A stretch of DNA of 64,000 nt, from NCBI RefSeq assembly GCF_006345805.1, contig NC_043014.1, positions 22,630,001 to 22,694,000 on the forward strand, given 5' to 3'. The translations under genes were made by a program, and so were the position numbers. Each line of letters opens with the position of its first letter. Positions within the stretch are counted from its first letter, which is position 1. The stretch comes from Octopus sinensis. Lineage: Eukaryota. Under the pieces are notes generated by a model. The model did not search any database. It saw only the letters and a list, made by a program, of their open reading frames with translations, and had not been told where the DNA came from. This document shows positions 4,350 to 43,245 of the stretch, piece by piece.

Positions 4350-4454
4350 CATACATTATATATATATATATATATATACATACATTATATATTATATAAT
4401 ATATATATATATATACATACATTTATATATATATATATGTATATATATATACAC

Positions 4455-4486
<32 letters not shown>

Positions 4487-4510
4487 TATATATATATTAT
4501 ATATATAAAC

Positions 4511-6205: not shown

Positions 6206-9200
6206 ATCATCATCATCATCATCAATTAACGTCCGCTTTCCATGCTAGCATGGGTTGGACGGTTCAACTGGGGTCTGGGGAGCCCGAAAGCTGCACCAGT
6301 CCAGTCAGATCTGGCAGTGTTTCTACAGCTGGATGCCCTTCCTAACGCCAACCACTCCGAGAGTGTAGTGGGTGATTTATGTGCCACCGACACAGGTGCC
6401 AGACGAGGCTGGCAAACGGCCACGCTCGGATGGTGTTTTTATGTGCCACCGACACAGGTGCCAGACGAGGCTGCAGACGGCCACGCTCGGATGGTGTTTT
6501 TATGTGCCACCGACACAGGTGCCAGACGAGGCTGGCAGACGGCCACGCTCGGATGGGTTTTATGAGGCTGGCAAACGGCCACGATCGGATGGTGCTTGTT
6601 ACGTGCCCACAGCACGGAGGCCAGTCGATGCGGTACTGGCTACGGCCACGTTCGGATGGTTTTCTTATGTGCCACGTGCCACAAAGATACAAATTCCATT
6701 GATGTTCGTCTATTTTGATTTGTTTTGATTTGATTTTCACTTGCCTCAACAGGTCTTCACAAGTGTCACAAGAAGGAAGGTATGCACAGGTGGACTGACT
6801 ACGTCCCAGGAGGGGCCATGGGTTATGGCTGACTAGTCTTGCCGGGTCTTCGGATGGTGTTTTTATGTGCCACCGACACAGGTGCTAGATGAGGCTGGCG
6901 AACGGCCACGATCGGATGGTGTTTGTCATGTGCCCACCGCACTGATGGATTTCTTGTGTGCCACAGGCACTGGTACCACAAGATACAAATTCCATTGATG
7001 TTCATCTATTTTGTCTATTTTGATTGATTTGATTTGATTGATTTGATTGATTTCACTTGCCTCAACCGGTCTCACAAGTGTCACAAGAAGGAGGTATGCA
7101 CAGGTGGACTGACTAGTCTGCCGGGTCTTCGGAAGGTGTTTTTATGTGCCACCGACACAGGTGCCAGATGAGGCTGGCGAACGGCCATGATCGGATGGTG
7201 TTTGTTACGTGCCCACAGCACGGAGGGTCGATGCGGAACTGGCTACGGCCACGTTCGGATGGTTCTCATGTGTGCCACCGGCACTGGTACCACAAAGTGT
7301 GTGTGCCACCGGCACTGGTACCACAAAGATACAGATTCCATTGATGTTCATCTATTTGATTTGTTTTGATTTGATTTGATTTTCACTTGCCTCAACAGTC
7401 TTCACAAGTGTCACCAGAGGAAAGATCCATTGATGTTCATCTATTTGATTTGTTTTGATTTGATTTTGATTTTCACTTGCCTCAACAGGCCTTCACAAGT
7501 ATCACAAGGNNNNNNNNNNNNNNNNNNNNNNNNNNNNNNNNNNNNNNNNNNNNNNNNNNNNNNNNNNNNNNNNNNNNNNNNNNNNNNNNNNNNNNNNNNN
7601 NNNNNNNNNCAGACGGCCACGCTCGGATGGTGTTTTTATGAGGCTGGCAACTGCCCACGTCGGATGGTGCTTGTTACGTGCCCACAGCCGGAGGCCCAGT
7701 CGATGCGGTACTGGCTACGGCCACGTTCGATTGTTTTTTCTATGTGCCACGTGCCACAAAGATACAAATTCCATTGATGTTCGTTCCTATTTTGATTTGT
7801 TTTGATTTGATTTCACTTCCTCAACAGGTCTTCACAAGTGTCACAAGAAGAAGGTATACCGCACAGTTGGACTGACTACGTCCCAGGTAGGGGCCATGGG
7901 TTATGGCCTGACTAGTCTTGCCGGGTCTTCGGATTGTTTTTATGTGCCACCGACACCAGGTGCTAATGAGGCTGGCGAACGGCCACGATCGATGGTGTTG
8001 TCACATGTGCCCACCGCACTGATGGATTTCTTGTGTGCCACAGGCACTGGTACCACAAGATACAAATTCCATTGATGTTCATCTATTTTGTCTATTTTGA
8101 TTGTGTTTGATTGATTTGATTTGATTTGATTTTCACTTGCCCTCAACCGTCTTCACAAGTGTCACAAAGGAAGGTATGCACAGGTGGACTGACTAGTCTT
8201 GCCGGGTCTCGGAAGGTGTTTTTTATGTGCCACCGACACAGGTGCCAGATGAGGCTGGCGAACGGCCATGATCGGATGGTGTTTGTTACGTGCCCACAGC
8301 ACGGAGGCCGGTCGATGCGAACTGGCTACGGCCCACGTTCGGATGGTTCTCATGTGTGCCACCGGCACTGTACCACAAAGTGTGTGCCCCGGCACTGGTA
8401 CCACAAAGATACAGATTCCATTGATGTTCATCTATTTTGATTTGTTTTGATTTGATTTGATTTCACTTGCCTCAACAGGTCTTCACAAGTGTCACAAGAG
8501 GGAAGATTCCATTGATGTTCATCTATTTTGATTTGTTTGATTTGATTTTGATTTTCACTTGCCTCAACAGGCTTCACAAGTATCACAAGGAGGAAGGTAT
8601 GCACAGTGGACTGACTACGTCCCAGGTAGGGGCCATGGTTTATGGCCTGACTAGTCTTGCCGGGTCTTCGGAAGGTGTTTTTATGTGCCACCGACACTGG
8701 TGCTAGATGAGGCTGGCGAACGGCCACGACCGGATGGTGTTTGTTATGTGCCCACAGCACGATGGCCAGTGATGCGGTACTGACACGGCCACGTTCGTAT
8801 GGATTCTGTGTGGCCACCGGCACTGGTACCACAAGCGGTACTGACTACGGCCACGTTCGGATGGATTTCTTGTTGCCACCGGCACTGGTACCCACAAGCG
8901 GTACTGACTACGGCCACGTTCGGATGGTTCTTGTGTGCCACTGCACTGGTACCCAAGGATACAAATTCCATTGATGTTCATCTATTTTGATTTGTTTTGA
9001 TTTGATTTGATTTTCACTTGCCTCAGCAGGTCTTCACAAGTCGTCAGGTATGTACAGGTGGACTGACTACGTCCCAGGTAGGCCCACGGGTTATGACCTG
9101 ACTAGTCTTGCCGGGTCTTCGGATGGTGTTTTTTATGTGCCACCATGTTACCCACAGCACGGAGGCCAGTCGATGCGGTACTGGCTACGGCCACGTTCGG

Positions 9201-10764: not shown

Positions 10765-10868
10765 TATATGTTATGTATAATGTATGTATATATATATGAC
10801 GTATGTTAGTATATATATATATATATATGGTATATGTATATGTATATATATATATTGTATATGTATAT

Positions 10869-10902
<34 letters not shown>

Positions 10903-10917
10903 ATATTTATATCTATA

Positions 10918-10950
<33 letters not shown>

Positions 10951-11042
10951 ATTATGTATATATATATATATTATATTCTATATATGTATATATATATATT
11001 ATATATATGTATATATTATATATATATATATAATATATATTA

Positions 11043-11078
<36 letters not shown>

Positions 11079-11261
11079 GTATAATATATATATGTATATA
11101 TATATATATATTATGTATATATATATGTATATATATATGTATGTATTATATGTATATATATATTATATATGTATATATATATGTATGTATATGTATGTAT
11201 ATATATGTATATATGTTATATATATGTATATATATATATGTATATATATGTATATATATGT

Positions 11262-11292
<31 letters not shown>

Positions 11293-11484
11293 GTTAATAT
11301 ATATATATGTATATATATATTATATTATAATATATATATATTATATATATATGTATATATATATATGTATATATATATATGTTATATATATGTGTATATA
11401 TATTTGTATACTTATATATATGTATATATATCATTGTTATATATAATATATATGTATATATATATATGTATATATATATATCGG

Positions 11485-11518
<34 letters not shown>

Positions 11519-11543
11519 TATATAATGATATGTATATAATATG

Positions 11544-11574
<31 letters not shown>

Positions 11575-11942
11575 GTATATATACATATATTGATATATAT
11601 ACTATTATGTATATATACATATATATGTATATATATATATGTATATATATATATGTATATAACATATATATGTAATATATATAGGGTATATATACATATA
11701 TATGTATATATACAATATAGCTATATATATATATGTATATCTATATATTATATAAATATATATATATATGTATATATATGTATATGTATATACATGTATT
11801 GTATATAATATATATGTATATATATATATATGTATAGTGTAATATATGTATATGTATATATATGTATATGTATATATGTATATATATATATATATATCTA
11901 TATAATCATATAATATATCTATATGTATATGTATATATATGG

Positions 11943-11981
<39 letters not shown>

Positions 11982-12142
11982 TATATATATATTATGTATA
12001 TATATGTATATATAATATGTATATATATATATATGTATATATATGTATATATATTATATATGTATTATATATATATATATGTATGTATATATATATATAT
12101 AATGTATATATATATATATATATAGTGTATATATATATATAT
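10765..12142. repeat. (TA)n/(TATG)n microsatellite
   Basis: TA alternation, mostly G-interrupted on the + strand. Confidence 0.97.
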
Positions 12143-13170
12143 ACAATGCATAATGTATGTCTGTGGCCTTCTTCAGCCGCGCACAACAGCTTCCACAAGG
12201 ACATGTGTAAATCAGAGCTGTTGAGCGTTTAATCTGGTTCTTTGAATTAATTGGTCATCTAGTACATACATATCATCATGGATACATACACCCATATACA
12301 CGCGTACCTATATGCCTCCAAGCCTATAAGCATACACACGCACACGCGCGTAAACATGTACATAAACACACACACACCCACACGCACGCGCGTACACATA
12401 CATGACCAATTAATCAAAGAACCAGATTAAACGCTCAACAGCTCTGATTTACAACACATTAGGTCCCCGACGAAACTGTTGATTATTGACACTTCTACAA
12501 CTAATTTTATCAATCCCTGACCACAATGTTGGTCCGTACCTCTATACATCCTTATCTTTATATTTTTTTACATTTTTATCATGTTTTTTTACTTTTATTT
12601 CTATTTCTATTTTTACTTTTATAACCTTATGCCTTTACATTTATTTGTATTTCTTTATATTTCTTTATATTCTTTATACACCCCTTTACATCTCCTTATA
12701 ATCTCTTTATTCATCTTTATGCTCTACCTTTTTATATTTTCTATACTTACACTTTTTATACATTTTTTATCCCTCGCCCTGGATTCTCGTCCTCCATCCT
12801 CACGTCTTATATGTATTTATGTATTTACATTACTTCAACTTAATTTCCTCATTCTACATTGAGAGAAGAAGAGATGGACGCTTCAATTCTATGCTGCTGC
12901 CGCATTATGTCGTACGCGAATGAGAGGATTTGCATCCCCAAGCAAGAATTTTTGATGTAACACATGTCCTTGTGGAAGCTGTTGTGCGTGGCTGAAGAAG
13001 GCCACAGACATACATTATGCATTGTTATAAATCTGTCTAATAAAGGCCCGAAACATATGTACCGCTGAGTCCTTCGCATCATGTTTTTATTTTGATCAAT
13101 TTACTCCTCCACCTACACCACCAAACGGTATACACAGGTGCTTATAATTATCAAGTACTCACCCCAAATT
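12143..13170 (+). mobile_element. Non-coding Penelope-like pLTR/3'UTR-derived element with inverted 5' segments
   Basis: 12143-12208 is the reverse complement of 12960-13025; 12206-12258 is the reverse complement of 12402-12453; T-rich body; hammerhead motif at 12988-13065. 5' inversion plus HHR is the known PLE signature. Confidence 0.7.
12988..13065 (+). ncRNA. Type I hammerhead ribozyme motif with extended helix II
   Basis: GUGG-CUGAAGA-A-GGCC ACAGA...UCUGU...GGCC-C-GAAA-C AUAU G-UA^CCGC; helix I GUGG/CCGC (perfect GCGG in the inverted copy at ~12176); palindromic helix III ACAUAUGU; predicted cleavage after 13061. Confidence 0.75.
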
Positions 13171-13179
13171 TCTATATAT

Positions 13180-13233
<54 letters not shown>

Positions 13234-13293
13234 ATATATATATATGTATATATATATATATATGTTATATAATATACGTATATATATATATAT

Positions 13294-13343
<50 letters not shown>

Positions 13344-13838
13344 GTATTATATATATGTTATATATAATATGTATATATATATATGTATATATAATATATG
13401 TATATATATATGTATATATATATATATGTATATATATAATATGTATATATATATAATATGTATATATATAATATATATATGTATATGTATATATATAGTA
13501 TGTATATATATATGTATATATATATATATGTATATATATATATGTATATATATATTATATATGTATATATATAATGTATATATATATGTATATGTATGTA
13601 TATAATATATATATATATATATATACGTATATATATATATATATATACGTATATATATATATGTATATATATATAATATGTATATATATATATATGTATA
13701 TAATATATATGTATATATACATATATATGTATATATATATATATGTATGTATATATATATATATGTATATATATATATGTATATATATATATGTATATAA
13801 TATATGTATATCTATATATATGTATATGTATATATATG

Positions 13839-13892
<54 letters not shown>

Positions 13893-14032
13893 TGTGTGTA
13901 TATATATATATGTATATATATATATGGTATATATATATTGTATATATAATATATATATGTATATATATATAGTATATATATATATAATGATATATAATAG
14001 TAATATATATATATATATATCTATATTGATAT

Positions 14033-14063
<31 letters not shown>

Positions 14064-14110
14064 GTAATGTATAGATATATTAATATATATATATGTATAA
14101 TATATTAATG

Positions 14111-14143
<33 letters not shown>

Positions 14144-14144
14144 G

Positions 14145-14241
<97 letters not shown>

Positions 14242-14244
14242 GTA

Positions 14245-14276
<32 letters not shown>

Positions 14277-14594
14277 GTATATATATGTATATGTATATAT
14301 TTATATATATATGTATATATATGTAGATATAGTATATATATGTATATATATATATGTATATATATATTATATATATATATATGTATATATATATTGTTAT
14401 ATATGTATATATATGTATATATATATGATAATATGATATATATATATGTATATATATATGTATATATATATATGTATATATATATGTATAATATATGTAT
14501 ATATATATATATATGTATATATATATGTTATATATATGTATATATATATGTATATATATATATATGTATATATATATATGTATATATATATATG

Positions 14595-14625
<31 letters not shown>

Positions 14626-14650
14626 GTATATATATATATGTATATATATG

Positions 14651-14683
<33 letters not shown>

Positions 14684-14697
14684 GTATTATATATATG

Positions 14698-14728
<31 letters not shown>

Positions 14729-14819
14729 GTGTATATATATATATATGTATATATATATATGTATATATATATATATGTATATATTTATATGTATATTATA
14801 TATATGTATATATATAATG

Positions 14820-14850
<31 letters not shown>

Positions 14851-14895
14851 GATATATATATATATAGATATATATATATATATATATAATATATG

Positions 14896-14926
<31 letters not shown>

Positions 14927-15018
14927 TATATATATATGTATATATATAGTATATATATATATATATATATATCATATATATTATATATATATATATATAT
15001 GTATATATATTTATATGT

Positions 15019-15049
<31 letters not shown>

Positions 15050-15100
15050 TTATATGTATATATATATATGTATATATATTTATATGTATATATATATATG

Positions 15101-15134
<34 letters not shown>

Positions 15135-15176
15135 TATATGTGTTATCTATGTATATATATATATGTATAGATATTA

Positions 15177-15210
<34 letters not shown>

Positions 15211-15406
15211 TATATATGTATATATATATATATATATTATATATATATGTGTATATATATATATATATATAATATTATATGTATATATATATATATATAT
15301 GTATATATATGTATATATATATGTATCTATATGTTTGTATATATATATGTATATATATATATATATATGTATATATATGTATATATATAGTATAGATATG
15401 TATATA

Positions 15407-15450
<44 letters not shown>

Positions 15451-15477
15451 TATATATATGTATATATTATGTATATA

Positions 15478-15516
<39 letters not shown>

Positions 15517-15548
15517 TATGTATATATATATGATATATATATATATAA

Positions 15549-15630
<82 letters not shown>

Positions 15631-15672
15631 TATTATATATATATATATGTATGTATATATATATATATATAT

Positions 15673-15704
<32 letters not shown>

Positions 15705-16926
15705 TATGTATAATTATATATGTATATATATATGTATATATATAGTATATATATATGTATATATATATGTGTATATGTATATGTATCTATTATATGTATA
15801 TATATATGTATATATATGTATATATATATATGTATTATATATGTATATAATATATGTATATATAATATGTATATGTATATGTATATATATATATATGTAT
15901 ATATATATTATGTATATGTATATATATATGTATATATATGTATATAATCTGTATATATATGTATATATATATGTATAATATGTATATATATGTATATATA
16001 TGTATATATATATGTATATGTATATATTTATGTATATGTATTGTATATATTTATGTATATGTATATATTTATGTATATATATATGTATATATAGGTATAT
16101 ATATATGTATATATATGTATATGTATATGTATATATATATGTATATATATGTATATGTATATATATGTATATATAATGTATGTATATATATATGTATATA
16201 TATACGTATAATATATATATATGTATATATATACGTATATATATATATATGTATATATATTATGTATATATATATGTATATATATACGCATATATGTATA
16301 TATATGTATATATATACGTATATATGTATATATATATGTATATATATACGTATATATGTATATATATATGTATATATATACGTATATATATATATATGTA
16401 TATATATGTATATATATATGTATATATATATGTATTATATATATATGTATATATTATGTATATATATATATGTATATATATAGTATATATATACGTATAT
16501 ATATATGTATATACATATGTATTATATACGTATATATATATGTATATATATGTATATATATATGTATATATATATTTATGTATATATATATGTGTATGTA
16601 TATATGTATGTATATATATATGTGTATGTATATATGTATGTATATATATATGTATATGTATATATGTATGTTTATATATATGTATATATATATATGTGTA
16701 TGTATATATATATGTATATATATATGTGTATATATATATGTATGTATATATATATGTATATATATATGTGTATATATATGTGTATGTATATATATTTGTA
16801 TATATATATGTGTATATATATGTATATAATATGTGTATATATATATGTATATATATATGTATATATATATATGTATATATATATATATGTATATATATAT
16901 GTATATATATGTATATATATATATGT

Positions 16927-16981
<55 letters not shown>

Positions 16982-17084
16982 TGTGTATATATATATGTAT
17001 ATATATATGTGTATATATATATGTATATATATATGTGTATATATATATATATGTATATATATATATGTGTATATATATATATGT
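13171..17084. repeat. ~3.9-kb (TA)n/(TATG)n microsatellite
   Basis: Longest TA array; G-interrupted, with tatacg variants at ~16200-16530 and tgtg variants at ~16590-17070. Confidence 0.97.
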
Positions 17085-17510
17085 ATTTTGTTTGTTTACT
17101 TGTTTTTTTATTCCAGTTTCAGCTAATGAGCTGTGGCCATGCTGGGGCACCGCCATTTGGTTTGGTACACGATTTTACCTCACGGATGCCATCTGATGCA
17201 TGAGAGAGTTCGATGCAGCTGCCCTCAGCTGCACCTCCTGCCGTGAAGTTGGTTCATCCGGGACACCTGACAGGAAGAGATCCAGTCCTACTTTAAAGAC
17301 ATCCGCATCTACACCATGCAGGTCCCTCAGGTTCTTCGGGAGGATATTGAAGAGCCGTGGGCCTCTGAAGCCCAGGCTATCACAATATCTTGTCCTACAT
17401 CTTGATGGAAAATGTGGAGTTCTTGGTAGTACGCAGTGGCGTCCAGTTCTGTCATTTGTGTGACTCTCGATGCCAAAGTCTGGGACAAGACCTTCCAGGA
17501 TCTTCCAGAT
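17085..17510 (-). mobile_element. CR1/L2-group LINE family B, short 3' fragment
   Basis: [19 protein letters not shown]...[30 protein letters not shown] plus the conserved ggcggtgccccagcatggccacagctc tail. Confidence 0.92.
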
Positions 17511-17685: not shown

Positions 17686-18165
17686 ATATTAGGGAATAAA
17701 TCCAAATTTACAGGGAAAAAATCAGATTTAGGATTAAATCGATTTTATAGTAAAATATTATAAAATATTATTCGAGACAAAACCACTATTTTGCAAAACA
17801 AACAAGGAAAGACTTAATCAATACATAAAATTTTAATAAATAGTCAAAAAAACCGCCACTACAATCGTTTCTTGTCTTGATCGACAATCTTCAGGTGGAC
17901 TTCCAATCTAAAAAATCAATATTTTAAATATATAAAAATAATAATTTTAAAATAATTAAAGTATGAATGAAAAAATAAGTATATAATCCATATATAACCT
18001 ATCTATAATCCATATATAAACAATATATAAACAATATATAAACAATATATAAACTAAAAAAACCTATCAACCATTAAATATAAAATATAAAATATAAAAT
18101 ATAAAATATAAAACAAAACAAAAAAAATAATAATATATAATAATAAACTATATATACACCCATAC
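17686..18165 (-). mobile_element. AT-rich non-coding element carrying a hammerhead (PLE pLTR-like)
   Basis: Discrete unit between TA arrays with internal short tandem repeats (atataaacaat, aatataa) and an HHR at 17856-17898. Confidence 0.6.
17856..17898 (-). ncRNA. Minimal type I hammerhead ribozyme
   Basis: Minus strand: CCAC-CUGAAGA-UUGUC gaucaa GACAA-GAAA-C gauu G-UA^GUGG; all core nucleotides present and helices I-III pair. Confidence 0.8.
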
Positions 18166-29084: not shown

Positions 29085-30118
29085 TGTCCAAATGCTTGAA
29101 GAAGTGGTAGTCGGTGGGTGAAAGATCAGGAGAATATGGAGGATGTGGTAAAGTCTTGCATCCCAAGTCTGTGAGCTTCTGCAGTGTTATCCTGGAAATG
29201 TGCAGTTGAGTGTTGTTGTGGAGCAGAATTGGACCATACCAATTAACAAGTGAATATGCATTTCTTCCAGCTGCTTACAGTAAACTTCCAATGTAATGCT
29301 CTGGTTAGATTCCAGAGGGCTGTAATGGATGACATCAATAGCAGACCACCAGACAGTCACCATAATCTTCTGCTGATGCAACTTTGGTTTCAGGGAATAT
29401 TTGGCTGCTTCATCACAATCAAGCCATTGACCCAAGCATCTATAATTGCCATAAAGGATCCACTTTTCATCACAAGTCATTATTTGATCAAGAAATGGGT
29501 CCTTAGAGTTTTGCAGAGAGAGCATCGAACACACTTCAAAACACCAAAGTCTTTGATTTTCACTGAGGTCATGCAGGACACACTTATCAAGTTCTTTCAC
29601 TTTGCCAATTTTCTTCAAATGATCTGATACTGTTGAAACACTGACACCAAGCATATGAGACATTTCTCTGACAATTTGTTGTGGGTTTTGTTCAAATATT
29701 GTTTTTAAATATTGATCATCTAGGATGGATGGATGTCTGCAATATTCTTGATCTTCAAGGCTCTCATTCCCACCACAGAATCTCTCAAGCCACCATCATA
29801 CCGTCCAACCACTAGTGGAACCTTCACCTCATGCTCTGTTGATATTGGTGGCTGTTTGAGAAACATTATGCCCAAGCTTGAATTCATGCAAAAAAAGTAA
29901 ATGCATTTCTTCTTCCTTCATGTTTGAAATTAAGGATTTCTTTGCTTCAAAATTATATTCTGAAAGAAATCAATACAAATTCATTAAAGAGTACACATAA
30001 ATTATTAAGCATGTAAAATTTCATCTAAAATACTTCAAAAATAGCATCTTAAAACGAATTTGAAAAAAAGTTTTTTTTAAAAATCAGAATTGGACAGTAT
30101 TTTCCAAACAACCTGATA
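29085..30118 (-). mobile_element. mariner (DD34D) transposon relic
   Basis: IMTCDEKWILY, KLHQQKIMVTVWW and HPPYSPDLSPTDYHFF motifs; 5' TIR-like tatcaggttgtttggaaaatactgtcc at 30092-30118; 3' end lost. Confidence 0.88.
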
Positions 30119-33439: not shown

Positions 33440-35689
33440 GGTACAGTGAATATATTGACATCTAAATTACACAAAAATGAAAATAACTCTGACATCTCAT
33501 TTTAACAAAATATTTTTAAAAAGGAATTTGAACATGTGTTTACATGAAACTTTTTCATCCCTGGTATTAACAAGGGTACCATTCATTCTCATTATATCAT
33601 AACTTTCTCTCAGACATAACCTACAAATTTTGTTATTATACTTATAAGATGGAGCTGAAAAGAGGATTTTCCAAGATGTTAAGTAATCTATACTGTTTCT
33701 TTTGAGTTGCCAATTCTACTGCCTTATGCATACCACCTATCACCTTATGCGTGCCTTATGCCTGTTCCTGGCCAGTTCCAAGCAGTTGATTTTTTTGCGG
33801 GCGCCTGCCAGTGCGCTGTGGACTGGTTCAACTTCTCCAGGCATCCCTGTCGTCTCAACATCTCTCCAGCCAAACCCTCAGCTATCGTTCCCTCCGACAG
33901 CGCACTAACATCATTATAAAACTGGCCGACAAGGGTGAAGCAGTGGTGGTATGGCGCGCAGACCTCTATAACACCGAAGCTCTCTGCCAACTTCATGACA
34001 CCTCTTTCTATTACCCTCTGCCCTCTGACCCCACACCCAGCTACCAACAGACGGTCTCCTCTACCATCCATGACCTCATCTTGTCCTCTCATCTCCCCCA
34101 CACCGCCTCCAACCTCATTGTCCGAATCCCCCGCACCCCCACCATTTACTTCCTCCCCAAAATCCACAAACCCAACAACCCTGGCCGCCCCATCGTCTCC
34201 GTCTGTAACTGCCCCACCGAGCTTATCTCCAAATATCTCGATCGTGTACTTGCTCCCCTAGTGGCTTCTCTCCCTTCTCACATCCATGACACCAACCATG
34301 CTCTTCATCTAGTCAACTCTTTCTCCTTCCCTCCTGGCCCCTCTAAACTTCTCTTTACTCTGGACATCCAAAGCCTCTACACTGTGATCCCTCACGACGA
34401 GGGGCTGCGTGCACTGAAACACTTCCTGGACTTCCGACCCAATCCCCAACCCGACACCTCGTTCGTCTGGCCGAACTTGTCCTCTCACTCAACTGCTTCT
34501 TGTTTGCAGGCGATTTCTACCAGCAGCAGTCGGAAGTGGCCATGGGAACGAGAATGGGCCCCAACTATGCAAACCTGTTCGTTGGCTATGTTGAGACCCA
34601 AATATTCTCTAGTTTCACTGGTCCCACTCCCGAACTATATGGCCGTTATATTGACGACTGTATTGGTGCCACCTCACTCTCCCGTGAACATCTAGACTCC
34701 TTCCTCTCTTTCATCAAATCTTTCCTTCCTGTCCTCCACTTCTCCCTGCACTATCTCTGACACCTCTGTCTCCTTTCTTGACATTTCGGTCATCATCCAT
34801 CACTCCACTCTTACCACCTCCATCCACTATGAACACACAGACTCACACACATACCTCTACTTCTCCTCCTCCTCCCACCCCAAAAACACCAAGCTTTCCA
34901 TCCCCTATTCCCAATTCCTCCGTCTACGCAGGCTCTGTAGTGACAACCATGACTTTGAGACTCAGTCTCAACTCATGGCTCGCCACTTCATCCTACGTGG
35001 ATATCCCCTCACCACTATCCACACCGCCCTTGCCAGAGCATGTTCCATGAACCGTGCATCTGCTCTCTCCCCCCAAATCCGCCTTGCAGTTTTCCGCCTC
35101 CCTTTTCCTTTTACCTACCACCCCATCACCCTACCTCTCCAACGCACCATTCTCTGAGCTTTCCGGCATCTCCAGTCCGACCCGTCCACTTCACACATCT
35201 TCCCTAACCGACCCCTTCCCTCCTTCAAAGGAACCCACAACCTACAACATATCGTGGTCCACAGCTTCTTCCCCAACCCTACCTCCCAACCTGGCTCGTT
35301 CCCCTGCTCCCACCCATGCTGCCACAGTTGCCCTTACCTCTCCAATACCACCCTTCTCACCAGCAACCATCATCGACCCTATCGTATCACCGACTCCTTC
35401 ACCTACACCTCCACCGATATCATTTATTGCATCTCCAGCTCTCTCTGCCATTCTCTGTACATCGGACAAACGGGATGCCGCTTGGCTGACCGGTTCGCAG
35501 AACACCTCCAAGACATCCGCCTCGGCAATGACACACCGGTCTCATGCCATTTCCGCTCTTCCAGTCACTCTTTGCAACACCTGTCCGTCTTCAGATTGTC
35601 CTTGCACAGTGGCCATCCTGACTCCTGTTTGCGCCGGGAACAGGGATCAATCTTCTCTCCGCACTTTTACGCCATTTGGGCTCAACTCT

Positions 35690-36200
35690 TCTCCCCTCTT
35701 CATCTAACCTCCTCCCCTTGCCTCTCTCCTCTCCCTCCTACTTCCTCCCACCCAACTCTCCTCTCTTGTTCCGACTCCTACTTCTCTTCACTCCTACTTC
35801 TCTTCACTCCTACTCTCTTTCCCTCTTCTCTCTTCTCTCTTACTCTCTTTCTCTCCTCTCTCTTGCTCTCTTACTCTCCTCTCTCTTACTCTCTTTTTCT
35901 CCTCTCTCTTTCTCTCTTCTCTCTTACTCTCTCTCTTCCCTCTTTCTCTCTTCTCTCTTCCTCTCTTTCTCTCTTCTCTCTTACTCTCTTTCTCTTTTCT
36001 CTCTTACTCTCTCTCCTCACATACCCACCTTCCCCTTCCTCCTTCATTGTCAACTCTCCCCCATAAGCCCACCCCACCCCTACACATTCCTACTCCACCT
36101 TTCCTATCCTTCCCATTCCCCCATCCTATCCCCTACACCCTCTCCCACATACCTCACCCCGACCCCCACCCTCTGCCTACCCACAACCCTCACTTCCACC
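35690..36200 (+). repeat. Polypyrimidine (CT-rich) tract in the PLE 3'UTR
   Basis: ~500 bp almost devoid of G, built from ctctcttactctcttt-like units. Confidence 0.9.
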
Positions 36201-36614
36201 CCTACCCTCTGCCTACTCACATACCCCAACTCTACCCCAACCCTCAGCGGAACCCACACCCCACCTGTGCTTTCCCCACTCTTGCCTCCCACACCTCCCA
36301 ACAGCATCACACCACACCACACTACACCATACAACATTACACATCACATCACAACACACCACCTACACACCAGCACTGACCAATTCCCATCCCCACATTG
36401 TCACACCTACACATACATACACGCACACATCCAGACCACCAGCGCTCTTTCACACACATACATACTCTCTTATACGCAGACGCACCTTCGTGTTGGGGGT
36501 CATTTTTACTTTGTTATCTCCCCTATTCTTCACTTTCTTGTGTGACCCTTCTGTCCGGCATCCAGTCGCCATGATAGATCGTTAGCAACTACACACATTT
36601 TTTTCTAACCTTGT

Positions 36615-36655
36615 TTTTTTCTGTAGAAGAGCGTAGGCTCAAAACGTAAAGGACT
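36615..36655 (+). ncRNA. Degenerate hammerhead-like motif in the PLE terminal repeat
   Basis: CUGUAGA-A-GAGC guag GCUC-AAAAC-GUA; helix II is perfect but core A6 and G12 are altered. Confidence 0.4.
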
Positions 36656-36737
36656 TTTCTATTCCTAAGCGTTATACTAATACATCTGTTTGTTTGTGTA
36701 CACCACCTTCTTCGTCTTTTGTTTTTTCGTAAAATCT

Positions 36738-36791
<54 letters not shown>

Positions 36792-37013
36792 TATATACAT
36801 ATATAATATATATACATTCTATATATATATATATATATCATATATATACATATATATTACATATATATATATACATATATATATATATATGCATAATATA
36901 TACAATATATATATATATTATATAATATTATAACATATATATATATGCATATATATACATAATATATAATATATATATATACTATATATATATAGATATA
37001 CATACATATATAT

Positions 37014-37045
<32 letters not shown>

Positions 37046-37309
37046 TAATATAGATATATATATAAATATGTATATATATATAATATTATATATATTATAT
37101 ATATATTATATATATAGTAATACTAAGCCATAAAGAGTTTAGCAACGAATTGCCTTACCACATAACCGAATTTAGAAATAGCAGTCAAAGAGTTATAGCT
37201 ATTTCTTCTACTAAAAAGGGAGATCTCAGTAAAAACAGCAATTGAAGGCAGACACACACAGGTAAGAGAGAATGAATTGACGGCAATCTATCATACAATT
37301 TTAAGTTAT

Positions 37310-37407
37310 CTACGGACGTACGTTCGAAATCAAGTTTTTAGGAAAGCATAAGAATTAAATATTAAATAATTCTATCTTACCAAAAACTTCTTTTCTCTTC
37401 AGCGTAG
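37310..37407 (-). ncRNA. Type I hammerhead ribozyme, copy 1 (GAAA read as GAA)
   Basis: CUACG-CUGAAGA-G[~70-nt helix II]C-GAAC GUAC GUC^CGUAG; one A missing relative to copy 2. Confidence 0.75.
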
Positions 37408-37887
37408 AATACTATAATCATAAATGATTATATTGAATTTTGAGATACTAAAGGCACCAACTCAACTCAGTATCAGAGCGAGCTAGAATCCGCAACTAGT
37501 ATCACCAAATCAATGCGTGAATGAAAAGATTGTGTCACCAGCCCCTTCCCACCCGTGTGTAGCCAAAACAAGATGCTGTGGTCATCTACTGAGATAAAAT
37601 ATGGTTATCCGTAATAATGAAGGTTGAAATTAATTAATTTGGAATATTATCAATTACACCAAGTAGTCTTCGGCATGTAAAAGCCTCATTCGAGAAAATT
37701 AAGTAATACTAAGCAATAAAGGGTTTAGCAACGAATTGCCTTACCACATACCGAATTTAGAAATAGCAGTCAAAGTTATAGCTATTTCTCTACTAAAAAG
37801 GGAGATCTCAGTAAAAAAGCAATTGGAAGGCAGACACAAACAGTAAGAGAATGAATGACGGCAATCTATCATACAATTTTAAGTTAT

Positions 37888-37986
37888 CTACGGACGTACG
37901 TTTCGAAATCAAGTTTTTAGGAAAGCATAAGAATTAAATATTAAATAATTCTATCTTACCAAAAACTTCTTTTCTCTTCAGCGTAG
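37888..37986 (-). ncRNA. Canonical type I hammerhead ribozyme, copy 2
   Basis: CUACG-CUGAAGA-GAAA ag AAGUUUUU GG..AGAAUUA loop UAAUUCU..CC u AAAAACUU ga UUUC-GAAA-C GUAC G-UC^CGUAG; full core, G10.1-C11.1 pair, GUC site between 37893 and 37892. Confidence 0.9.
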
Positions 37987-38471
37987 AATACTATAATCAT
38001 AAATGATTATATATTGAATTTTGAGATACTAGAAGGCACCAACTCAACTCAGTATCAGAGCGAGCTAGAATCCGCAACTAGTATCACCAAATTCAATGCG
38101 TGAATGAAAAGATTGTGTCACCAGCCCCTTCCCACCCGCGTGTAGCCAAAACAAGATGCTGTGGTCATCTACTGAGATAAAATATGGTTATCCGTAATAA
38201 TGAAGGGTGAAATTAATTAATTTGGAATAATTATCAATTACACCAAGTAGCTTCGGCATGTAAAAGCCTCATTCGAGGAAAATTTAAGTAATACTAAGCA
38301 ATCAAGGGTTTAGCAACGAATTGCCTTACCACATACCGAATTTAGAAATAGCAGTCAAAGAGTTATAGCTATTTCTTCTACTAAAAAGGGAGATCTCAGT
38401 AAAAACAGCAATTGGAAGGCAGATACAAAAAATTGTATGATAGATTGCCGTCAATTCATTCTCTCTTACCT

Positions 38472-39720
38472 TGGGTGCCTCCATGAGACCTGGTGATGCG
38501 GCTTAGTCATGAAGAATTTGTTGGAAACGCAGAGTTTCCGGTAAGAGCAAAGCTCCAACAGTCTCTGGCCATTCTCATTCACCTTCCCCACGCCAAAGCG
38601 TCCAAGGCAATCTGGCCATGCCCCATGATCGGATCCCACCCTTGCGTTGAAGTCGCCCAGAAGGAAGATGGGCTCCGACCCTGGTATCTGGCTGATGGTG
38701 GCGTCGAGCTCCTCATAGAACCGGTCTTTTATTTCCTGAGGAGAGTTGGGTTGGGGCATAAGCACTAATTATGTTTGCCTTCCCCGTTGATGTTGCAAGG
38801 TTAAGAGTGAGGATGCGCTCTGAGCCATTTGAAGAGGGATCACCATGGGGAGCAAGCTGTTCCTCACGGCAAACCCCACGCCATGCTGGCGGGCCTCCTC
38901 GACGGGTCTCCCCTCCCCAGTAGAAGTGTAGTCCTTCTCCCGTAGCATGCCGTCTGCGGCGAGCCTGGTCTCTTGCAGCGCCGCTATGTCGATGTTCAGC
39001 TTTTCAATTCGGTGTTGATGACTGCTGCTGTCTTCCTACCGGTCGTTCATCTGTCGTAGATCGTCAATGATGCCAGGGCACATGGTCCTGACATTCCAGG
39101 TGGCCAGTCGCAAGACTGGTGACTGGGTGTTTGTTTTCCCTTTGTTTGCTGGTGCAGGGTTTTCAGTCTGCTTTTCAGATTTTGTCCTAGCTCCAAGCAC
39201 CCATTGAAGCGGGCAGTCTGTGGCGGGTCAGCACCATTATTGGCCGGGGGCTGACCAGTGGGACTTCAATGGTCCCTCCCACCGTTAGAGACGGCCCGTA
39301 GCGCCCGGGATTACGCCAATTCACCCTGGCTTATAACTCGTAACTGCCATCTCAGCTTGTTCCATCGATGGAGTAGTTTCTCCATGGCGCATGCCTGGGC
39401 GATAGAAACGAAGACACTGGGCTGCCCAGACACCAGAATCTCCCTCTCGGCCCCCCAGACATAATCCAAAGGAATGCAGTGCAGTACGTTTGGAGTCTGG
39501 TTGGCTGCAGGAGTTGCCGGAAAGGGGTCGAGATTCGACACCCTACCGCCTTCGGAGCTCCACTCCGGATTTTCTGTCTGGGTTTACTCCCATAGCCTTT
39601 CCCTCTCCCAAGAGCATCCGCAAGGCAGCGGAGCGAGGGTTTTGGAGTCAGAGTTTTCCTTCTCCTAGACTGGCTGGCCCACCAAGGCTAACGAGCCCAC
39701 TGCCCACCTGGTTAGACCGC
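38472..39720 (-). mobile_element. RTE (BovB/RTE-1-like) 5' portion: GC-rich 5'UTR plus AP endonuclease
   Basis: LRLATWNVRTM, LNIDIAALQET, LLGDFNARVG, NENGQRLLELC, SWRHPR; 5'UTR motif ctaggagaaggaaaactc; frameshifted and truncated at the tandem element. Confidence 0.9.
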
Positions 39721-39721
39721 C

Positions 39722-39753
<32 letters not shown>

Positions 39754-39841
39754 GATATATATATATATATATATATTAATATATATACATATATATATAT
39801 ATACATATTATATATACAATATAATATATATACATATATAT

Positions 39842-39877
<36 letters not shown>

Positions 39878-39917
39878 GTAATATATGTAGATGTATATAT
39901 ATTGTTATATATATATA

Positions 39918-39977
<60 letters not shown>

Positions 39978-40040
39978 CTATATAATAGTATTATATATAT
40001 ATATATAATATATATACATATATTATATATACATATATAC

Positions 40041-40127
<87 letters not shown>

Positions 40128-40209
40128 TACATATATATTATATATATATATGTATATATATATAATGTATATATATATATAATATGTATATATATTATAT
40201 GTATAGATG

Positions 40210-40246
<37 letters not shown>

Positions 40247-40311
40247 GTATTGTATATAATATATATATATGTATGTATATATATATACATATATGTATTA
40301 ATATACATACA

Positions 40312-40345
<34 letters not shown>

Positions 40346-40520
40346 CATATATATATTATATAATACATATATATATATATATACATTATATATATATATA
40401 TACTATATATATATACATATATATAATCATATACATATATATACATATATACAATATATATATATACATATATATATATCTACATATATAGATACATATT
40501 ATGATATATATATATATATC

Positions 40521-40551
<31 letters not shown>

Positions 40552-40755
40552 TCGATATACATATATATATTATTACATATATATATATATATATAATATA
40601 TATATATCTACATATATATATATATATATACATATATTATATATATAAATACTATTATATATATACATATATATATATATCTACATATATATATATAATT
40701 ATACCAATATATTACTACATATATATATAGTATACATATATATACATATATATAC

Positions 40756-40786
<31 letters not shown>

Positions 40787-40919
40787 CACATATATATACA
40801 TTATATAATATATACATATATATATATATAGATATATATATATATATACATATATAACATATATATATAGATATACATATATATATATATATATCATATA
40901 TATATATATATACATATAT

Positions 40920-40953
<34 letters not shown>

Positions 40954-41017
40954 CATATTATATATATATACATATATTATATATACATATATATATATAT
41001 ATATACATATATATAGC

Positions 41018-41050
<33 letters not shown>

Positions 41051-41239
41051 CAATATATATATAATATAATATATACATATATATATATATATACATATAT
41101 TATATATATACATATATATATACATATATATATATAATACATATTATATTTATATATACATAATATATATATAATATCATATATATATATACAATATACA
41201 TATACATATATATATATATATACATAACATACATATATG

Positions 41240-41289
<50 letters not shown>

Positions 41290-41627
41290 CATATATATAT
41301 ATACATATGTATATATATACATATATGTTATATATACATATATGTATATATATACATATATGTATATATATATACTCATATATATACATATAATATATAT
41401 ATACATTATGTATATATATACATATATGTATATATATATACATATACGTATATATATATACATATATATTATATACATATATATATATACATATACATAT
41501 ATGTATATATAAATACATATATATATGTATATACATATATATATATATATATAGACATATATGTATATATATATATATAAGACATATATGTATATATATA
41601 TATATGTATATATTATATACATATATG

Positions 41628-41676
<49 letters not shown>

Positions 41677-41699
41677 TCATATATATATATATATATATA

Positions 41700-41779
<80 letters not shown>

Positions 41780-41786
41780 TATACAC
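39721..41786. repeat. ~2.1-kb (TA)n/(TACA)n microsatellite
   Basis: TA alternation, mostly C-interrupted on the + strand. Confidence 0.97.
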
Positions 41787-41787
41787 A

Positions 41788-43245
41788 CTAGCAGAGATAC
41801 CTGGCATTGCCCGTGTTACATTCAATTGAAGAATTAGACTTTTCTATTATTTTGTCTGTAATGAACTGGAATATCTATATTTGGAATTTCATCGAAATTG
41901 CAGATGAGGGTTATTTCCCTCTTTACATATTTTTAAAAAATTGTAATTGTGCCACATGTATCTCATACTACTGATGTTTTTGCGGATATTCCAAAATTCC
42001 AGTCTTATAGAATCTGTTAAAAAGATTTTCCTCCTGAAAAATGAAGGTCAGGGAGCTCTAAAATGTAAGAGTTAACACCCTTATTAGGGGTGGGCATCTT
42101 AATGTTAACCAGAGAAGTTGAATTGTTGAGAATCTTTTTAACTTGGGTCTTATATCTATTGTTTGAATTTCTTTGAAATAGGAAATATATGTTCACTGGG
42201 TTTGTAAAAGAGAGCAAAGCTACAGGAAACCAAAAGATGAATGATCACAATAAGCAGTCAGCTACCCTACCCTAGTTGTTACTGCTCCCAATGTAGGATT
42301 CCCCACCATCCAAGTGACAGGCACAGCTGTAAGATGCATTATGAATCTATAGCAATTAGAAGGGCATGACCCAACTGAAATAAACATTAACAACTGTGTG
42401 ACGTAAGGAGAAACGAAAGTGTCACCTTTGGAGTTTGCAAATGACCACTATACTGATACGTAACTGGACAGAATAAATTTACAATCTATAAATATATAAG
42501 GGCATGACCCAACTGAAATAAACATTAACAACTGTGTGACGTAAGGAGAAACGAAAGTGTCACCTTTGGAGTTTGCAAATGACCACTATACTGATACGTA
42601 ACTGGACAGAATAAATTTACAATCTATAAATATCTTTGAATAACTAGTCACTCATGTGGGAAGGCCTTGAAATCAATGTTACCATCTGGGGACTATGTGT
42701 GACCCAGTGATAATAAAAAGACTGAAAGGAGATATGCAATCAAATAACTTTACTCAACACTTTGCAACTGAATCAGTGGAAGCAAAGATGCCTCTCATTT
42801 ACTTGACAATTTATGCAGGACATTGCAGACATCACAATGTAAGTGTATATCAAAGCAAACTGTTACACTGTTGTACCATTGAATTACTAATAATGCTCAA
42901 GAATTACAAATAATGCTTCCAAGAGCACAACTGTATTTGTCTTTGCTTAGATAAAATGACAAAATTGTGGGCGTTAAGTCCCCATGGAGGGGTCTTTTTA
43001 ACTTGTAAGATGATGAAATTTTATAAATATTACTTCATTTGTGTCTAATATCTATGGTTAAAATTTCACCAACAGCAAAAATATATGAATTGTCATGGTG
43101 GTTATGGCCCTTCTGCATAGAATATAATTTCCAAATTTCATAAAGATCCATTCAGGGCTTTTGATCTAGTTTTGGATCATAAAAGAAATGACTAAAATTT
43201 GGGAGTTAAGGCCACCATTAGGGTGTTTTATATATATATATATAT
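41788..43245 (-). mobile_element. Non-autonomous Helitron-like element (5' boundary uncertain)
   Basis: Minus 3' end: GC hairpin cacgggcaatgccagg, ~8 nt, CTAG|T at 41788; 41788-42365 is homologous to 51098-51664. Confidence 0.65.
42360..42633 (+). repeat. 138-bp near-perfect tandem duplication
   Basis: aagggcatgacccaactg...caatctataaatat starts at 42360 and again at 42498. Confidence 0.95.

What the first reader, a model, noticed from the sequence alone, without database searches (positions are those of the whole stretch)
37116..38471. Candidate cephalopod retrozyme: ~585-bp non-coding tandem unit with one hammerhead per full unit
Seen: 2.2 head-to-tail copies with no ORF. On the minus strand each full copy has a type I hammerhead. 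Copy 2 (37888-37986) is fully canonical: 5-bp helix I, CUGAAGA, G-C closing pair, GAAA, palindromic ACGUACGU helix III, GUC site. The predicted cuts at 37893/37892 and 37315/37314 are 578 nt apart. The element's 5' end carries a 44-bp inverted copy of sequence just downstream of the cut site. Known: metazoan non-LTR retrozymes (coral, mussel, axolotl; newt satellite 2; schistosome Sm-alpha) are short tandem units with type I HHRs that yield abundant circular RNAs, and 5' inversions are a Penelope hallmark. Inference: read-through transcription releases a unit-length RNA that may circularise and be re-inserted by PLE RT. The monomer is longer than the few-hundred-nt units typical of described examples, and helix II is unusually long (~70 nt).
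Basis: partly seen in the sequence, partly recalled or inferred. Interest (0 to 1): 0.92.

Follow-up and report, generated by a model that had tools for sequence, protein, structure and literature searches.

The report
Hammerhead-ribozyme tandem repeat in an octopod
A 2.2-copy, non-coding ~580-bp tandem repeat carries a genuine self-cleaving (hammerhead) RNA motif and has the insertion signature of Penelope-type retrotransposition, so it is a new, probably dead, cephalopod example of the "retrozyme" class already known in animals.

Summary
Window 37117-38471 contains 2.2 head-to-tail copies of a 578-586-bp unit. The copies are 96% identical and no ORF exceeds 52 aa.

On the minus strand, copy 2 has a complete type I hammerhead at 37987->37887, cutting between 37893 and 37892. 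It matches Rfam Hammerhead_1 end to end (20.9 bits, below the gathering score) with a 66-nt insertion in helix II. Copy 1 has lost one A of the GAAA core and no longer matches.

Two copies cofold into a double hammerhead through the palindrome ACGUACGU. The unit RNA is unusually structured in the ribozyme polarity only (z = -4.1).

The 5' end is an in-place inversion of nucleotides +13 to +55 after the cut site. The 3' end sits flush in a (TA)n tract. No Penelope ORF adjoins it on its strand.

The host is octopod-like: the best named LINE hits are Octopus and Argonauta.

This fits a Penelope-mobilised non-autonomous retrozyme. The claimed oddities are minor: published units span 51-972 bp. I could not test self-cleavage, circular RNA or genome-wide copy number.

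Verdict: a new member of a known kind, of modest interest.

The parts
37117..37694 (-). Tandem unit copy 1 (the 3'-most copy on the minus strand). It ends flush against (TA)n at 37116/37117.
   Evidence: It is 96% identical to copy 2, and the differences are mostly 1-2-bp indels private to one copy.
37695..38279 (-). Tandem unit copy 2 (full length, 585 bp).
38280..38428 (-). Partial unit copy 3, covering the 3' ~150 nt of a unit.
   Evidence: It is 95% identical to copy 2.
38429..38471 (+). Inverted 5' terminal segment. This is the next ~42 nt of the unit (+13 to +55 after the ribozyme cut), inverted in place, with about 7 nt lost at the junction.
   Evidence: It is identical to the reverse complement of 37261-37302.
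37887..37987 (-). Complete type I hammerhead ribozyme of copy 2. C17 is at 37893 and the cut falls between 37893 and 37892.
   Evidence: Descriptor hit with 0.05 expected per shuffled window. Rfam RF00163 scores 20.9 bits, E = 0.0055, over the full model. The MFE fold keeps helices I and II.
37905..37974 (-). Extended helix II (70 nt): 4 bp, an AG/GA internal loop, a 10-bp stem, a 3-bp stem, a 7-bp stem and a 9-nt loop.
   Evidence: Rfam aligns it as a 66-nt insertion.
37309..37408 (-). Hammerhead of copy 1 with a defective core (GAA instead of GAAA). Its potential cut site is 37315/37314.
   Evidence: Rfam gives no hit at E<=10 in an equal-sized search.
36741..37116 (.). (TA)n microsatellite abutting the element's 3' end. 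It is the presumed target of target-primed reverse transcription.
38472..39721 (-). Decayed 5' fragment of a LINE (APE endonuclease domain, 2 stops, no frameshift), directly upstream on the same strand. Its own 5' end abuts a >2-kb (TA)n tract that starts at 39722. Its 3' part is missing.
   Evidence: Pfam Exo_endo_phos, E = 2e-4. No other copy in the window.

Best explanation
This is a moderately old insertion of a non-autonomous, ORF-less retroelement that carries a hammerhead ribozyme. It is of the animal non-LTR retrozyme type, that is, a derivative of a Penelope-like element (PLE), sitting in an octopod-like genome.

Proposed working of the family:
1. A tandem array is transcribed as a multimer (inferred).
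2. Adjacent hammerheads pair through the palindrome ACGUACGU into a double hammerhead. Each cuts after GUC and releases 578-nt RNAs (the fold is computed; the cleavage is inferred).
3. [quoted passage not shown]
4. The reverse transcriptase and GIY-YIG nuclease of an autonomous PLE nick a (TA)n tract and copy more than one unit length of the RNA. This yields tandem cDNA with a PLE-style 5' inversion (inferred from the anatomy).

State of this particular locus: each of the three copies has picked up its own private changes since insertion. One is the loss of an A in copy 1's GAAA. The array therefore no longer has two intact ribozymes and is probably inactive.
For: - Tandem ORF-less unit.
- Canonical type I core and helices in copy 2, with 0.05 hits expected by chance per window.
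- End-to-end Rfam Hammerhead_1 alignment, E = 0.0055. It is lost in copy 1, which differs by one core nucleotide; this serves as an internal control.
- The homodimer cofold gives exactly the double hammerhead, with an 8-bp intermolecular helix III: -60.4 kcal/mol against 2 x -24.0.
- The 578-nt RNA folded as a circle scores -138.1 kcal/mol against -115.1 +/- 5.6 for shuffles (z = -4.1, 0 of 100 as stable). The opposite polarity gives z = -1.25.
- Helix I of 6 bp then an internal loop, and helix II of 4 bp then an internal loop. This matches the 6-bp/4-bp geometry described for canonical metazoan type I hammerheads (PMC4209133).
- 5' inversion and 3' end in (TA)n. These are the PLE insertion hallmarks described in PMC8557442.
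- GC is 34%; published retrozymes are below 45-50% (PMC7229834).
- All PLE protein similarity in the window lies at 33740-35271 on the opposite strand. There is none in or next to the array.
- The copies differ by about 4%, with a star-like pattern of private changes. That argues against an assembly duplication and implies the A deletion came after insertion.
- Two more ORF-less elements with hammerhead-like motifs sit in (TA)n tracts in the same 64 kb.
Against: - There is only one locus of this unit in the window. No other copy could be retrieved from any reachable collection. A dispersed family is therefore not shown.
- The Rfam score is below the gathering threshold (20.9 against 34 bits).
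- Both helix II copies are identical, so there is no covariation evidence.
- There are no expression or cleavage data.
- There is no target-site duplication. The 5' junction lies in a LINE and the 3' junction in (TA)n, so the insertion was not a simple one.
- By the published criterion for an active element (two consecutive units with complete hammerheads), this array fails today.
Confidence: 0.7

Rival explanations
1. A solo terminal repeat (pLTR) of an ordinary autonomous Penelope-like element was later duplicated at the DNA level by unequal crossing-over or slippage. On this reading the array is a local minisatellite born from a PLE end, not a product of an independently transposing retrozyme family.
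For: PLE pLTRs carry type I hammerheads (PMC4209133). The 2026 preprint 10.64898/2026.07.22.740005 proposes exactly this birth route for retrozyme arrays. Only one locus is seen in the window. A decayed PLE lies 1.4 kb away.
Against: The nearby PLE is on the opposite strand, in convergent orientation, GC-rich, far more decayed, and shares no sequence with the unit. The array begins with a partial unit plus an in-place 5' inversion and ends at (TA)n. That is the signature of a single more-than-unit-length reverse-transcription event rather than of unequal crossing-over. The three copies show a star-like pattern of private changes, consistent with simultaneous origin.
Confidence: 0.2
2. The motif is a chance hammerhead-like sequence inside an unrelated tandem repeat.
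For: The Rfam score is below the gathering threshold and the site is missed in whole-window scans. Helix II is very long and AU-rich.
Against: All 15 core positions, G10.1-C11.1, a 6-bp helix I and the palindromic helix III are present. The descriptor expects 0.05 hits per shuffled window. Rfam E = 0.0055 with a full-length alignment. The motif sits in the genomic context known for such ribozymes: tandem, ORF-less, with PLE-type ends.
Confidence: 0.03
3. The 2.2-copy structure is an assembly artefact, a collapsed or expanded repeat in a scaffold that does contain a gap elsewhere.
For: The window has a 100-N gap at 7510-7609. Many of the differences between copies are single-base indels.
Against: The copies differ by about 4%, each with private substitutions and indels, rather than being identical. 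The adjacent LINE reads through 250 codons without a frameshift, so the assembly is not generally indel-prone here.
Confidence: 0.04

Closest known systems
Metazoan non-LTR retrozymes (Acropora, Mytilus, Ambystoma; Cervera & de la Pena 2020, PMC7229834; vertebrate survey 10.64898/2026.07.22.740005)
   Same: Head-to-tail tandem units with no coding capacity, low GC, a type I hammerhead in the unit, a highly self-paired unit RNA, and co-occurrence with PLEs in the genome.
   Different: The unit (578-585 bp) is longer than the 170-400-nt invertebrate examples, but it lies inside the 51-972-bp range of the 2026 survey. Helix II is 70 nt rather than a 4-bp stem with a loop. Only two ribozymes are present and one is broken. 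No expression data exist. In the papers I could search, hammerheads or retrozymes are not explicitly described in cephalopods.
Hammerheads in the pseudo-LTRs of Penelope-like elements (Cervera & de la Pena 2014, PMC4209133; Craig et al. 2021, PMC8557442)
   Same: Type I topology, a weak palindromic helix III implying action as a dimer, a longer-than-usual helix II, a 5' inverted segment or 30-40-bp tail, and insertion into (TA)n.
   Different: No RT/GIY-YIG ORF lies between or next to the repeats on the same strand. Helix I is 6 bp and there is no bulged nucleotide before G10.1, so the core looks canonical rather than like a 'min-HHR'. A true min-HHR is seen downstream of a related PLE ORF in locus L001, 12551-12584.
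Newt satellite 2 / axolotl HHR_Amex repeats and Schistosoma hammerhead repeats
   Same: [quoted passage not shown]
   Different: Those have about 330-bp units, very high copy numbers and a short helix II with the conserved loop 1-loop 2 contacts. Here both 'loops' are internal loops of longer helices, and the copy number is unknown.
Plant LTR retrozymes (PMC4918200)
   Same: The same logic: a non-autonomous element with a self-cleaving hammerhead and 600-1000-nt circular RNA intermediates mobilised by an autonomous element's RT.
   Different: Those carry type III hammerheads inside true LTRs, with PBS/PPT and 4-bp target duplications, and depend on Gypsy-type elements. None of these features is present here.

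Membership tests
Hammerhead ribozyme, type I (Rfam RF00163) | Conserved core C3-U-G-A-N-G-A9, G12-A-A14, A15.1-U16.1 and an H17 cleavage site | tested here: met
   Copy 2 has CUGAAGA, GAAA and GUC. Copy 1 fails because it has GAA.
Hammerhead ribozyme, type I (Rfam RF00163) | Three helices around the core, with helix I open (type I), and a G10.1-C11.1 pair | tested here: met
   Helix I is 6 bp. Helix II is closed by G-C. Helix III is 2 bp plus a GUAC loop.
Hammerhead ribozyme, type I (Rfam RF00163) | Score at or above the curated gathering threshold (34 bits) | tested here: not met
   The score is 20.9 bits, E = 0.0055, in a 151-nt search, and there is no hit at gathering. The shortfall is explained by the penalty for the 66-nt insertion in helix II.
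Hammerhead ribozyme, type I (Rfam RF00163) | Mg2+-dependent self-cleavage at the predicted site | not testable with these tools
   This needs in vitro transcription of monomer and dimer constructs.
Animal non-LTR retrozyme | Head-to-tail tandem of at least 2 units without coding capacity | tested here: met
   2.2 units; the longest ORF is 52 aa; no PLE or other protein similarity.
Animal non-LTR retrozyme | A complete type I hammerhead in at least two consecutive units (criterion for 'active' in 10.64898/2026.07.22.740005) | tested here: not met
   Copy 2 is complete and copy 1 lacks one core A. The deletion is private to copy 1, so the criterion was probably met at insertion. That is an inference.
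Animal non-LTR retrozyme | Low GC (<45-50%) and a highly self-paired unit RNA | tested here: met
   GC is 34%. The circular fold has z = -4.1 with 64% of bases paired. The opposite strand has z = -1.25.
Animal non-LTR retrozyme | Dispersed multicopy family in the genome | tested here: inconclusive
   There is one locus in 64 kb. No copies were found in metagenome, viral or prokaryote contigs, in a 21-kb Argonauta locus, or in protein collections. The source genome could not be reached.
Animal non-LTR retrozyme | Unit-length linear and circular RNAs in vivo | not testable with these tools
   No transcriptome access.
Autonomous Penelope-like element (array read as its pLTRs) | RT plus GIY-YIG ORF between or adjacent to the repeats on the same strand | tested here: not met
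   tblastn with 120 PLE proteins hits only 33740-35271 on the plus strand. Upstream on the minus strand is a LINE APE domain.
PLE-mediated insertion (any PLE-mobilised element) | 5' inverted segment or tail, more than one unit length in tandem, and a microsatellite (TA)n target | tested here: met
   Inverted 42-43 nt at 38429-38471; 2.2 units; 3' end flush with (TA)n. The features are as described in PMC8557442.

The most novel reading that the evidence does not exclude
Two readings remain open.

(a) The block 39721->37117 may be one chimeric cDNA inserted into a single long (TA)n tract. It consists of the LINE 5' fragment, the inverted +13..+55 segment and 2.2 units. On this reading, reverse transcription reached the 5' end of a hammerhead-cleaved RNA, because the inversion stops 12 nt from the cut. 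It then switched template to a LINE mRNA. That would be a physical footprint showing that the ribozyme-cleaved RNA is the retrotransposition template.

(b) The ribozyme may be a functional variant in which a 70-nt helix II and an extended helix I replace the usual loop 1-loop 2 contact with contacts between two internal loops. It would then be an obligate double hammerhead.
Probability: 0.15. Interest if true: 0.55.

Novelty: new member of a known kind. Interest (0 to 1): 0.33.

Why it matters
Retrozymes are the main known source of ribozyme-made circular RNAs in animals, and they are now thought to be parasites of Penelope-like elements. A cephalopod example extends their known range within molluscs beyond the mussel. 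It adds a hammerhead with an unusually long helix II whose first 4 bp and internal loop keep the canonical geometry, which makes it a natural test of how much stem extension the fold tolerates. The locus also offers a clean in-locus experiment on double-hammerhead logic, because an intact core lies next to a core broken by a single nucleotide. It does not change the current picture of these elements. Octopus genomes are known to be rich in PLEs (PMC13282606), so such derivatives are expected.

Tried and rejected
- Whole-window Rfam at gathering and a 1.8-kb E-value scan found no hammerhead. Only a 151-nt scan with laxer filters recovered it.
- I searched for other copies using a helix I/core/helix III pattern and a GC-rich 23-mer of the unit. 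I found 0 hits in JGI metagenome contigs, 0 in IMG/VR and 0 in GTDB genomes.
- A protein-route search with the unit's 44-aa ORF found no candidate.
- Exact look-ups of 16 window ORFs found none in the 15-billion-protein collection. The source genome therefore could not be sampled through the look-up of encoding contigs.
- I fetched PLE locus L001 (ENA metagenome, 61% aa identity), the 796-bp contig L002 and the Argonauta hians locus L003. None contains the unit.
- I considered that the plus-strand PLE at 33.7-35.7 kb owns the repeat as its pLTR and rejected it. It is on the opposite strand, oriented tail to tail, with no sequence similarity.
- I considered an alternating A-B-A higher-order repeat, because copies 1 and 3 share an identical 80-nt stretch (family D6). 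I rejected it because the pattern is star-like, with changes private to each copy.
- I considered a penaeid shrimp origin because of the extreme (TA)n content and rejected it on the LINE RT hits to Octopus and Argonauta.
- There are no tRNA or SINE-like parts.
- The third hammerhead-like motif at 17898->17856 lacks G10.1-C11.1 and gets no Rfam support. I treat it as doubtful.

Full report

Yes. Direct-repeat families with 578-588-bp spacing tile 37109-38431. In a self-BLAST, copy 2 (37695-38279) matches copy 1 (37116-37694) at 96.2% and a partial third copy (38280-38429) at 95.3%. It also matches an inverted piece at 38464-38429. The unit occurs nowhere else in the 64 kb. TRF missed the array only because its longest period is 500. 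No ORF touching the array exceeds 52 aa.

A three-way alignment shows that each copy carries its own private changes, mostly 1-2-bp indels. Copies 1 and 3 agree wherever copy 2 is odd, and the reverse also holds. This star-like pattern fits three copies that were identical at insertion. It argues against an assembly duplication, which would give identical copies. The neighbouring LINE reads through 250 codons with two stops and no frameshift, so the assembly is not generally indel-prone here.

**2. The ribozyme**

On the minus strand, copy 2 reads UCUACG-CUGAAGA-[70-nt helix II closed by G-C]-GAAA-CGUACGUC|CGUAGA. That gives:
- helix I of 6 bp;
- the full 15-nt core;
- G10.1-C11.1;
- a 2-bp helix III (A15.1-U16.1, C15.2-G16.2) around a GUAC loop;
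- a GUC site cut between 37893 and 37892.

A structural descriptor I wrote finds this site. In 100 dinucleotide shuffles of the window it finds 0.05 sites on average.

Rfam finds nothing at gathering or in a 1.8-kb E-value scan. When only 151 nt are searched, Hammerhead_1 (RF00163) aligns end to end (model 1-45 of 45) at 20.9 bits, E = 0.0055. Helix II is treated as a 66-nt insertion, and that penalty explains the sub-threshold score.

Copy 1 is identical except for GAA in place of GAAA. It gives no Hammerhead_1 hit at E<=10 in an equal-sized search. This is a useful internal control. Because the deletion is private to copy 1, the ancestral unit most likely had an intact core. That is an inference.

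The MFE fold of 116 nt keeps helix I and helix II. Helix I is 6 bp followed by a 2x2 internal loop and 3 more pairs. Helix II is 4 bp followed by an AG/GA internal loop and about 20 more pairs. This 6-bp/4-bp spacing is the geometry described for canonical metazoan type I hammerheads, whose loops 1 and 2 touch (PMC4209133). Internal loops may play that role here, but I could not test this.

A 2-bp helix III with a palindromic loop is the hallmark of hammerheads that work as dimers (PMC4209133, PMC7229834). Two copies cofold into the double hammerhead. It has an 8-bp intermolecular ACGUACGU helix and swapped helix I strands, at -60.4 kcal/mol against 2 x -24.0.

In that structure each active site combines the core of one copy with the cleavage site of the other. 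In today's locus, the intact copy 2 core would therefore cut at copy 1's site (37315/37314). The site at 37893/37892 depends on the broken copy 1 core or on slow action as a monomer.

**3. The unit RNA**

I folded the 578-nt RNA between the two cut sites as a circle. It reaches -138.1 kcal/mol against -115.1 +/- 5.6 for 100 shuffles (z = -4.1, none as stable), with 64% of bases paired. The complementary polarity gives z = -1.25. This polarity-specific excess of structure is what is reported for retrozyme circular RNAs (PMC7229834). GC is 34%.

**4. Ends and surroundings**

*5' end.* The direct repeat stops at ...GGCAGAUACA. The next ~42 nt of the unit are present but inverted in place (38429-38471), and about 7 nt are lost at the junction. 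These 42 nt correspond to +13 to +55 after the cut site. This is the anatomy of a twin-priming-type 5' inversion. It matches the inverted 5' segments and 30-40-bp tails described for PLE insertions (PMC8557442).

*3' end.* The element ends flush in a (TA)n tract (36741-37116).

*Upstream on the same strand.* Here lies not a PLE ORF but a decayed 5' fragment of a LINE at 39721->38472. It holds an APE endonuclease domain (Pfam Exo_endo_phos). Its own 5' end abuts a >2-kb (TA)n tract starting at 39722, and its 3' part is missing. There is no target-site duplication.

There are three possible histories, and I cannot choose between them without an empty site:
- The retrozyme inserted into a LINE and the LINE's 3' part was deleted at the same time.
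- The LINE fragment and the retrozyme form one chimeric cDNA made by template switching near the cleaved 5' end.
- A LINE-promoted read-through transcript of an earlier nested copy was retrotransposed.

*PLE content of the window.* tblastn with 120 PLE proteins hits only 33740-35271 on the plus strand. That is a heavily decayed RT plus GIY-YIG element. It is GC-rich, convergent with the array, and shares no sequence with the unit. Its 3' end also abuts the same (TA)n tract.

(TA)n-like tracts cover 18% of the window. Yet every boundary I examined of the PLE-type elements lies against one, which suggests a target preference.

**5. Other hammerhead elements in the window**

A second ORF-less element lies at 12143-13175 (+), flanked by (TA)n on both sides. 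It has:
- CUGAAGA at 12992-12998;
- a bulged A;
- a GGCC/GGCC-based long helix II;
- GAAA;
- the palindrome ACAUAUGU;
- a GUA site;
- a 4-bp helix I.

Its 5' end carries two inverted copies of internal segments, one of which includes the 5' half of the ribozyme. Rfam and the MFE fold do not support it, so it is a min-HHR-like candidate only.

A third motif at 17898->17856 lacks G10.1-C11.1 and is doubtful.

As a positive reference, a textbook PLE min-HHR lies about 1.1 kb downstream of a related PLE ORF in locus L001.

**6. Host**

The window's better-preserved LINE RT (5092-5835, minus strand) has its best named hits in Octopus (65%) and Argonauta hians (61%). A short unnamed ENA contig scores 81%, and the remaining hits drop to 52% or less. 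An octopod-like cephalopod is therefore supported.

**7. Comparison with what is known**

Animal non-LTR retrozymes are short, low-GC, ORF-less tandem repeats with type I hammerheads. [quoted passage not shown] They have been described in a coral, a mussel and the axolotl, and 'from molluscs to arthropods' (PMC7229834). A 2026 preprint shows that their consensus lengths range from 51 to 972 bp and that they are phylogenetically derived from PLE pLTRs (10.64898/2026.07.22.740005).

The present element has the defining anatomy: it is tandem, ORF-less, low in GC, carries a type I hammerhead and has PLE-type ends. As it stands today it fails the criterion of two consecutive complete ribozymes. Its family-level properties, copy number and circular RNA, could not be tested.

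The 70-nt helix II does lie outside the 4-8 bp described for canonical and PLE hammerheads (PMC4209133), and it is the one genuinely variant feature. In the library I could search, no paper describes hammerheads or retrozymes in cephalopods. PLEs are known to be abundant in Octopus (PMC13282606).

**8. What I could not do**

Every route to further genomic copies failed: pattern scans, an ORF homology search, exact look-ups of 16 window ORFs and fetched loci. Whether this is a dispersed retrozyme family, the pLTR of an autonomous PLE or a one-off therefore stays open. That is the main uncertainty.

**9. Verdict**

The feature is best described as a probably inactive insertion of a Penelope-dependent hammerhead retrozyme in an octopod genome. 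It is a new member of a known kind and of modest interest (0.33). The most novel reading still open is that the LINE-retrozyme block is a single chimeric cDNA marking the ribozyme-cleaved 5' end, together with a functional long-helix-II variant (probability about 0.15).

Noticed in passing
window 12143-13175 (+): A second ORF-less PLE-type element flanked by (TA)n on both sides. It has a min-HHR-like motif: CUGAAGA at 12992-12998, a bulged A, a long helix II based on GGCC/GGCC, GAAA, the palindrome ACAUAUGU, and a predicted cut between 13061 and 13062. Its 5' end carries inverted copies of 12960-13025 (98%) and 12414-12453 (100%). Rfam and the MFE fold do not support it.
   Followed up: partly
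window 17856-17898 (-): A compact hammerhead-like motif (CCAC-CUGAAGA-UUGUC...GACAA-GAAA-CGAUUGUA-GUGG) in an AT-rich ~480-bp block between two TA/CA microsatellites. It lacks the G10.1-C11.1 pair and gets no Rfam hit at E<=10, so it is doubtful.
   Followed up: partly
window 33740-36740 (+): A decayed Penelope-like element with an RT (DUF8422/RVT_1-like, about 60% aa identity to many marine-animal PLEs) and a GIY-YIG remnant near 35420-35540. A CT-rich low-complexity 3' region follows. Its 3' end abuts the same (TA)n tract as the hammerhead array, tail to tail. I found no hammerhead in it.
   Followed up: partly
window 38472-39721 (-): A LINE 5' fragment (APE endonuclease domain, two stops, no frameshift) that lacks its RT and 3' end. 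It is sandwiched between a >2-kb (TA)n tract and the 5' inverted end of the hammerhead array, with a junction microhomology of about 3-4 nt (AGG/CCT). It may be a chimeric cDNA or an insertion-associated deletion.
   Followed up: partly
window 3351-4043 (+), 4423-5835 (-), 1722-2519: Several copies of a relatively young jockey/CR1-like LINE in inverted orientation. The two ORFs are about 90% identical. The best named relatives are in Octopus and Argonauta, which I used to place the host.
   Followed up: yes
window 29187-29663 (-): A mariner-type transposase fragment (Pfam Transposase_1, E = 3e-18).
   Followed up: no
whole window; the largest tracts are 10802-12128, 13176-17088 and 39718-41788: (TA)n-like microsatellite covers 18% of the window, in tracts of up to about 4 kb. 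Every PLE-type element boundary I examined lies against such a tract. There is also a 100-N assembly gap at 7510-7609.
   Followed up: partly
locus L001 12551-12584 (+): A textbook PLE min-HHR (GCU-CUGACGA-A-GGGC UAAC GCUC-GAAAC-GUC-AGC) about 1.1 kb downstream of a PLE RT ORF. It lies in an unnamed ENA metagenome contig whose RT is 61% identical to the window's decayed PLE.
   Followed up: no
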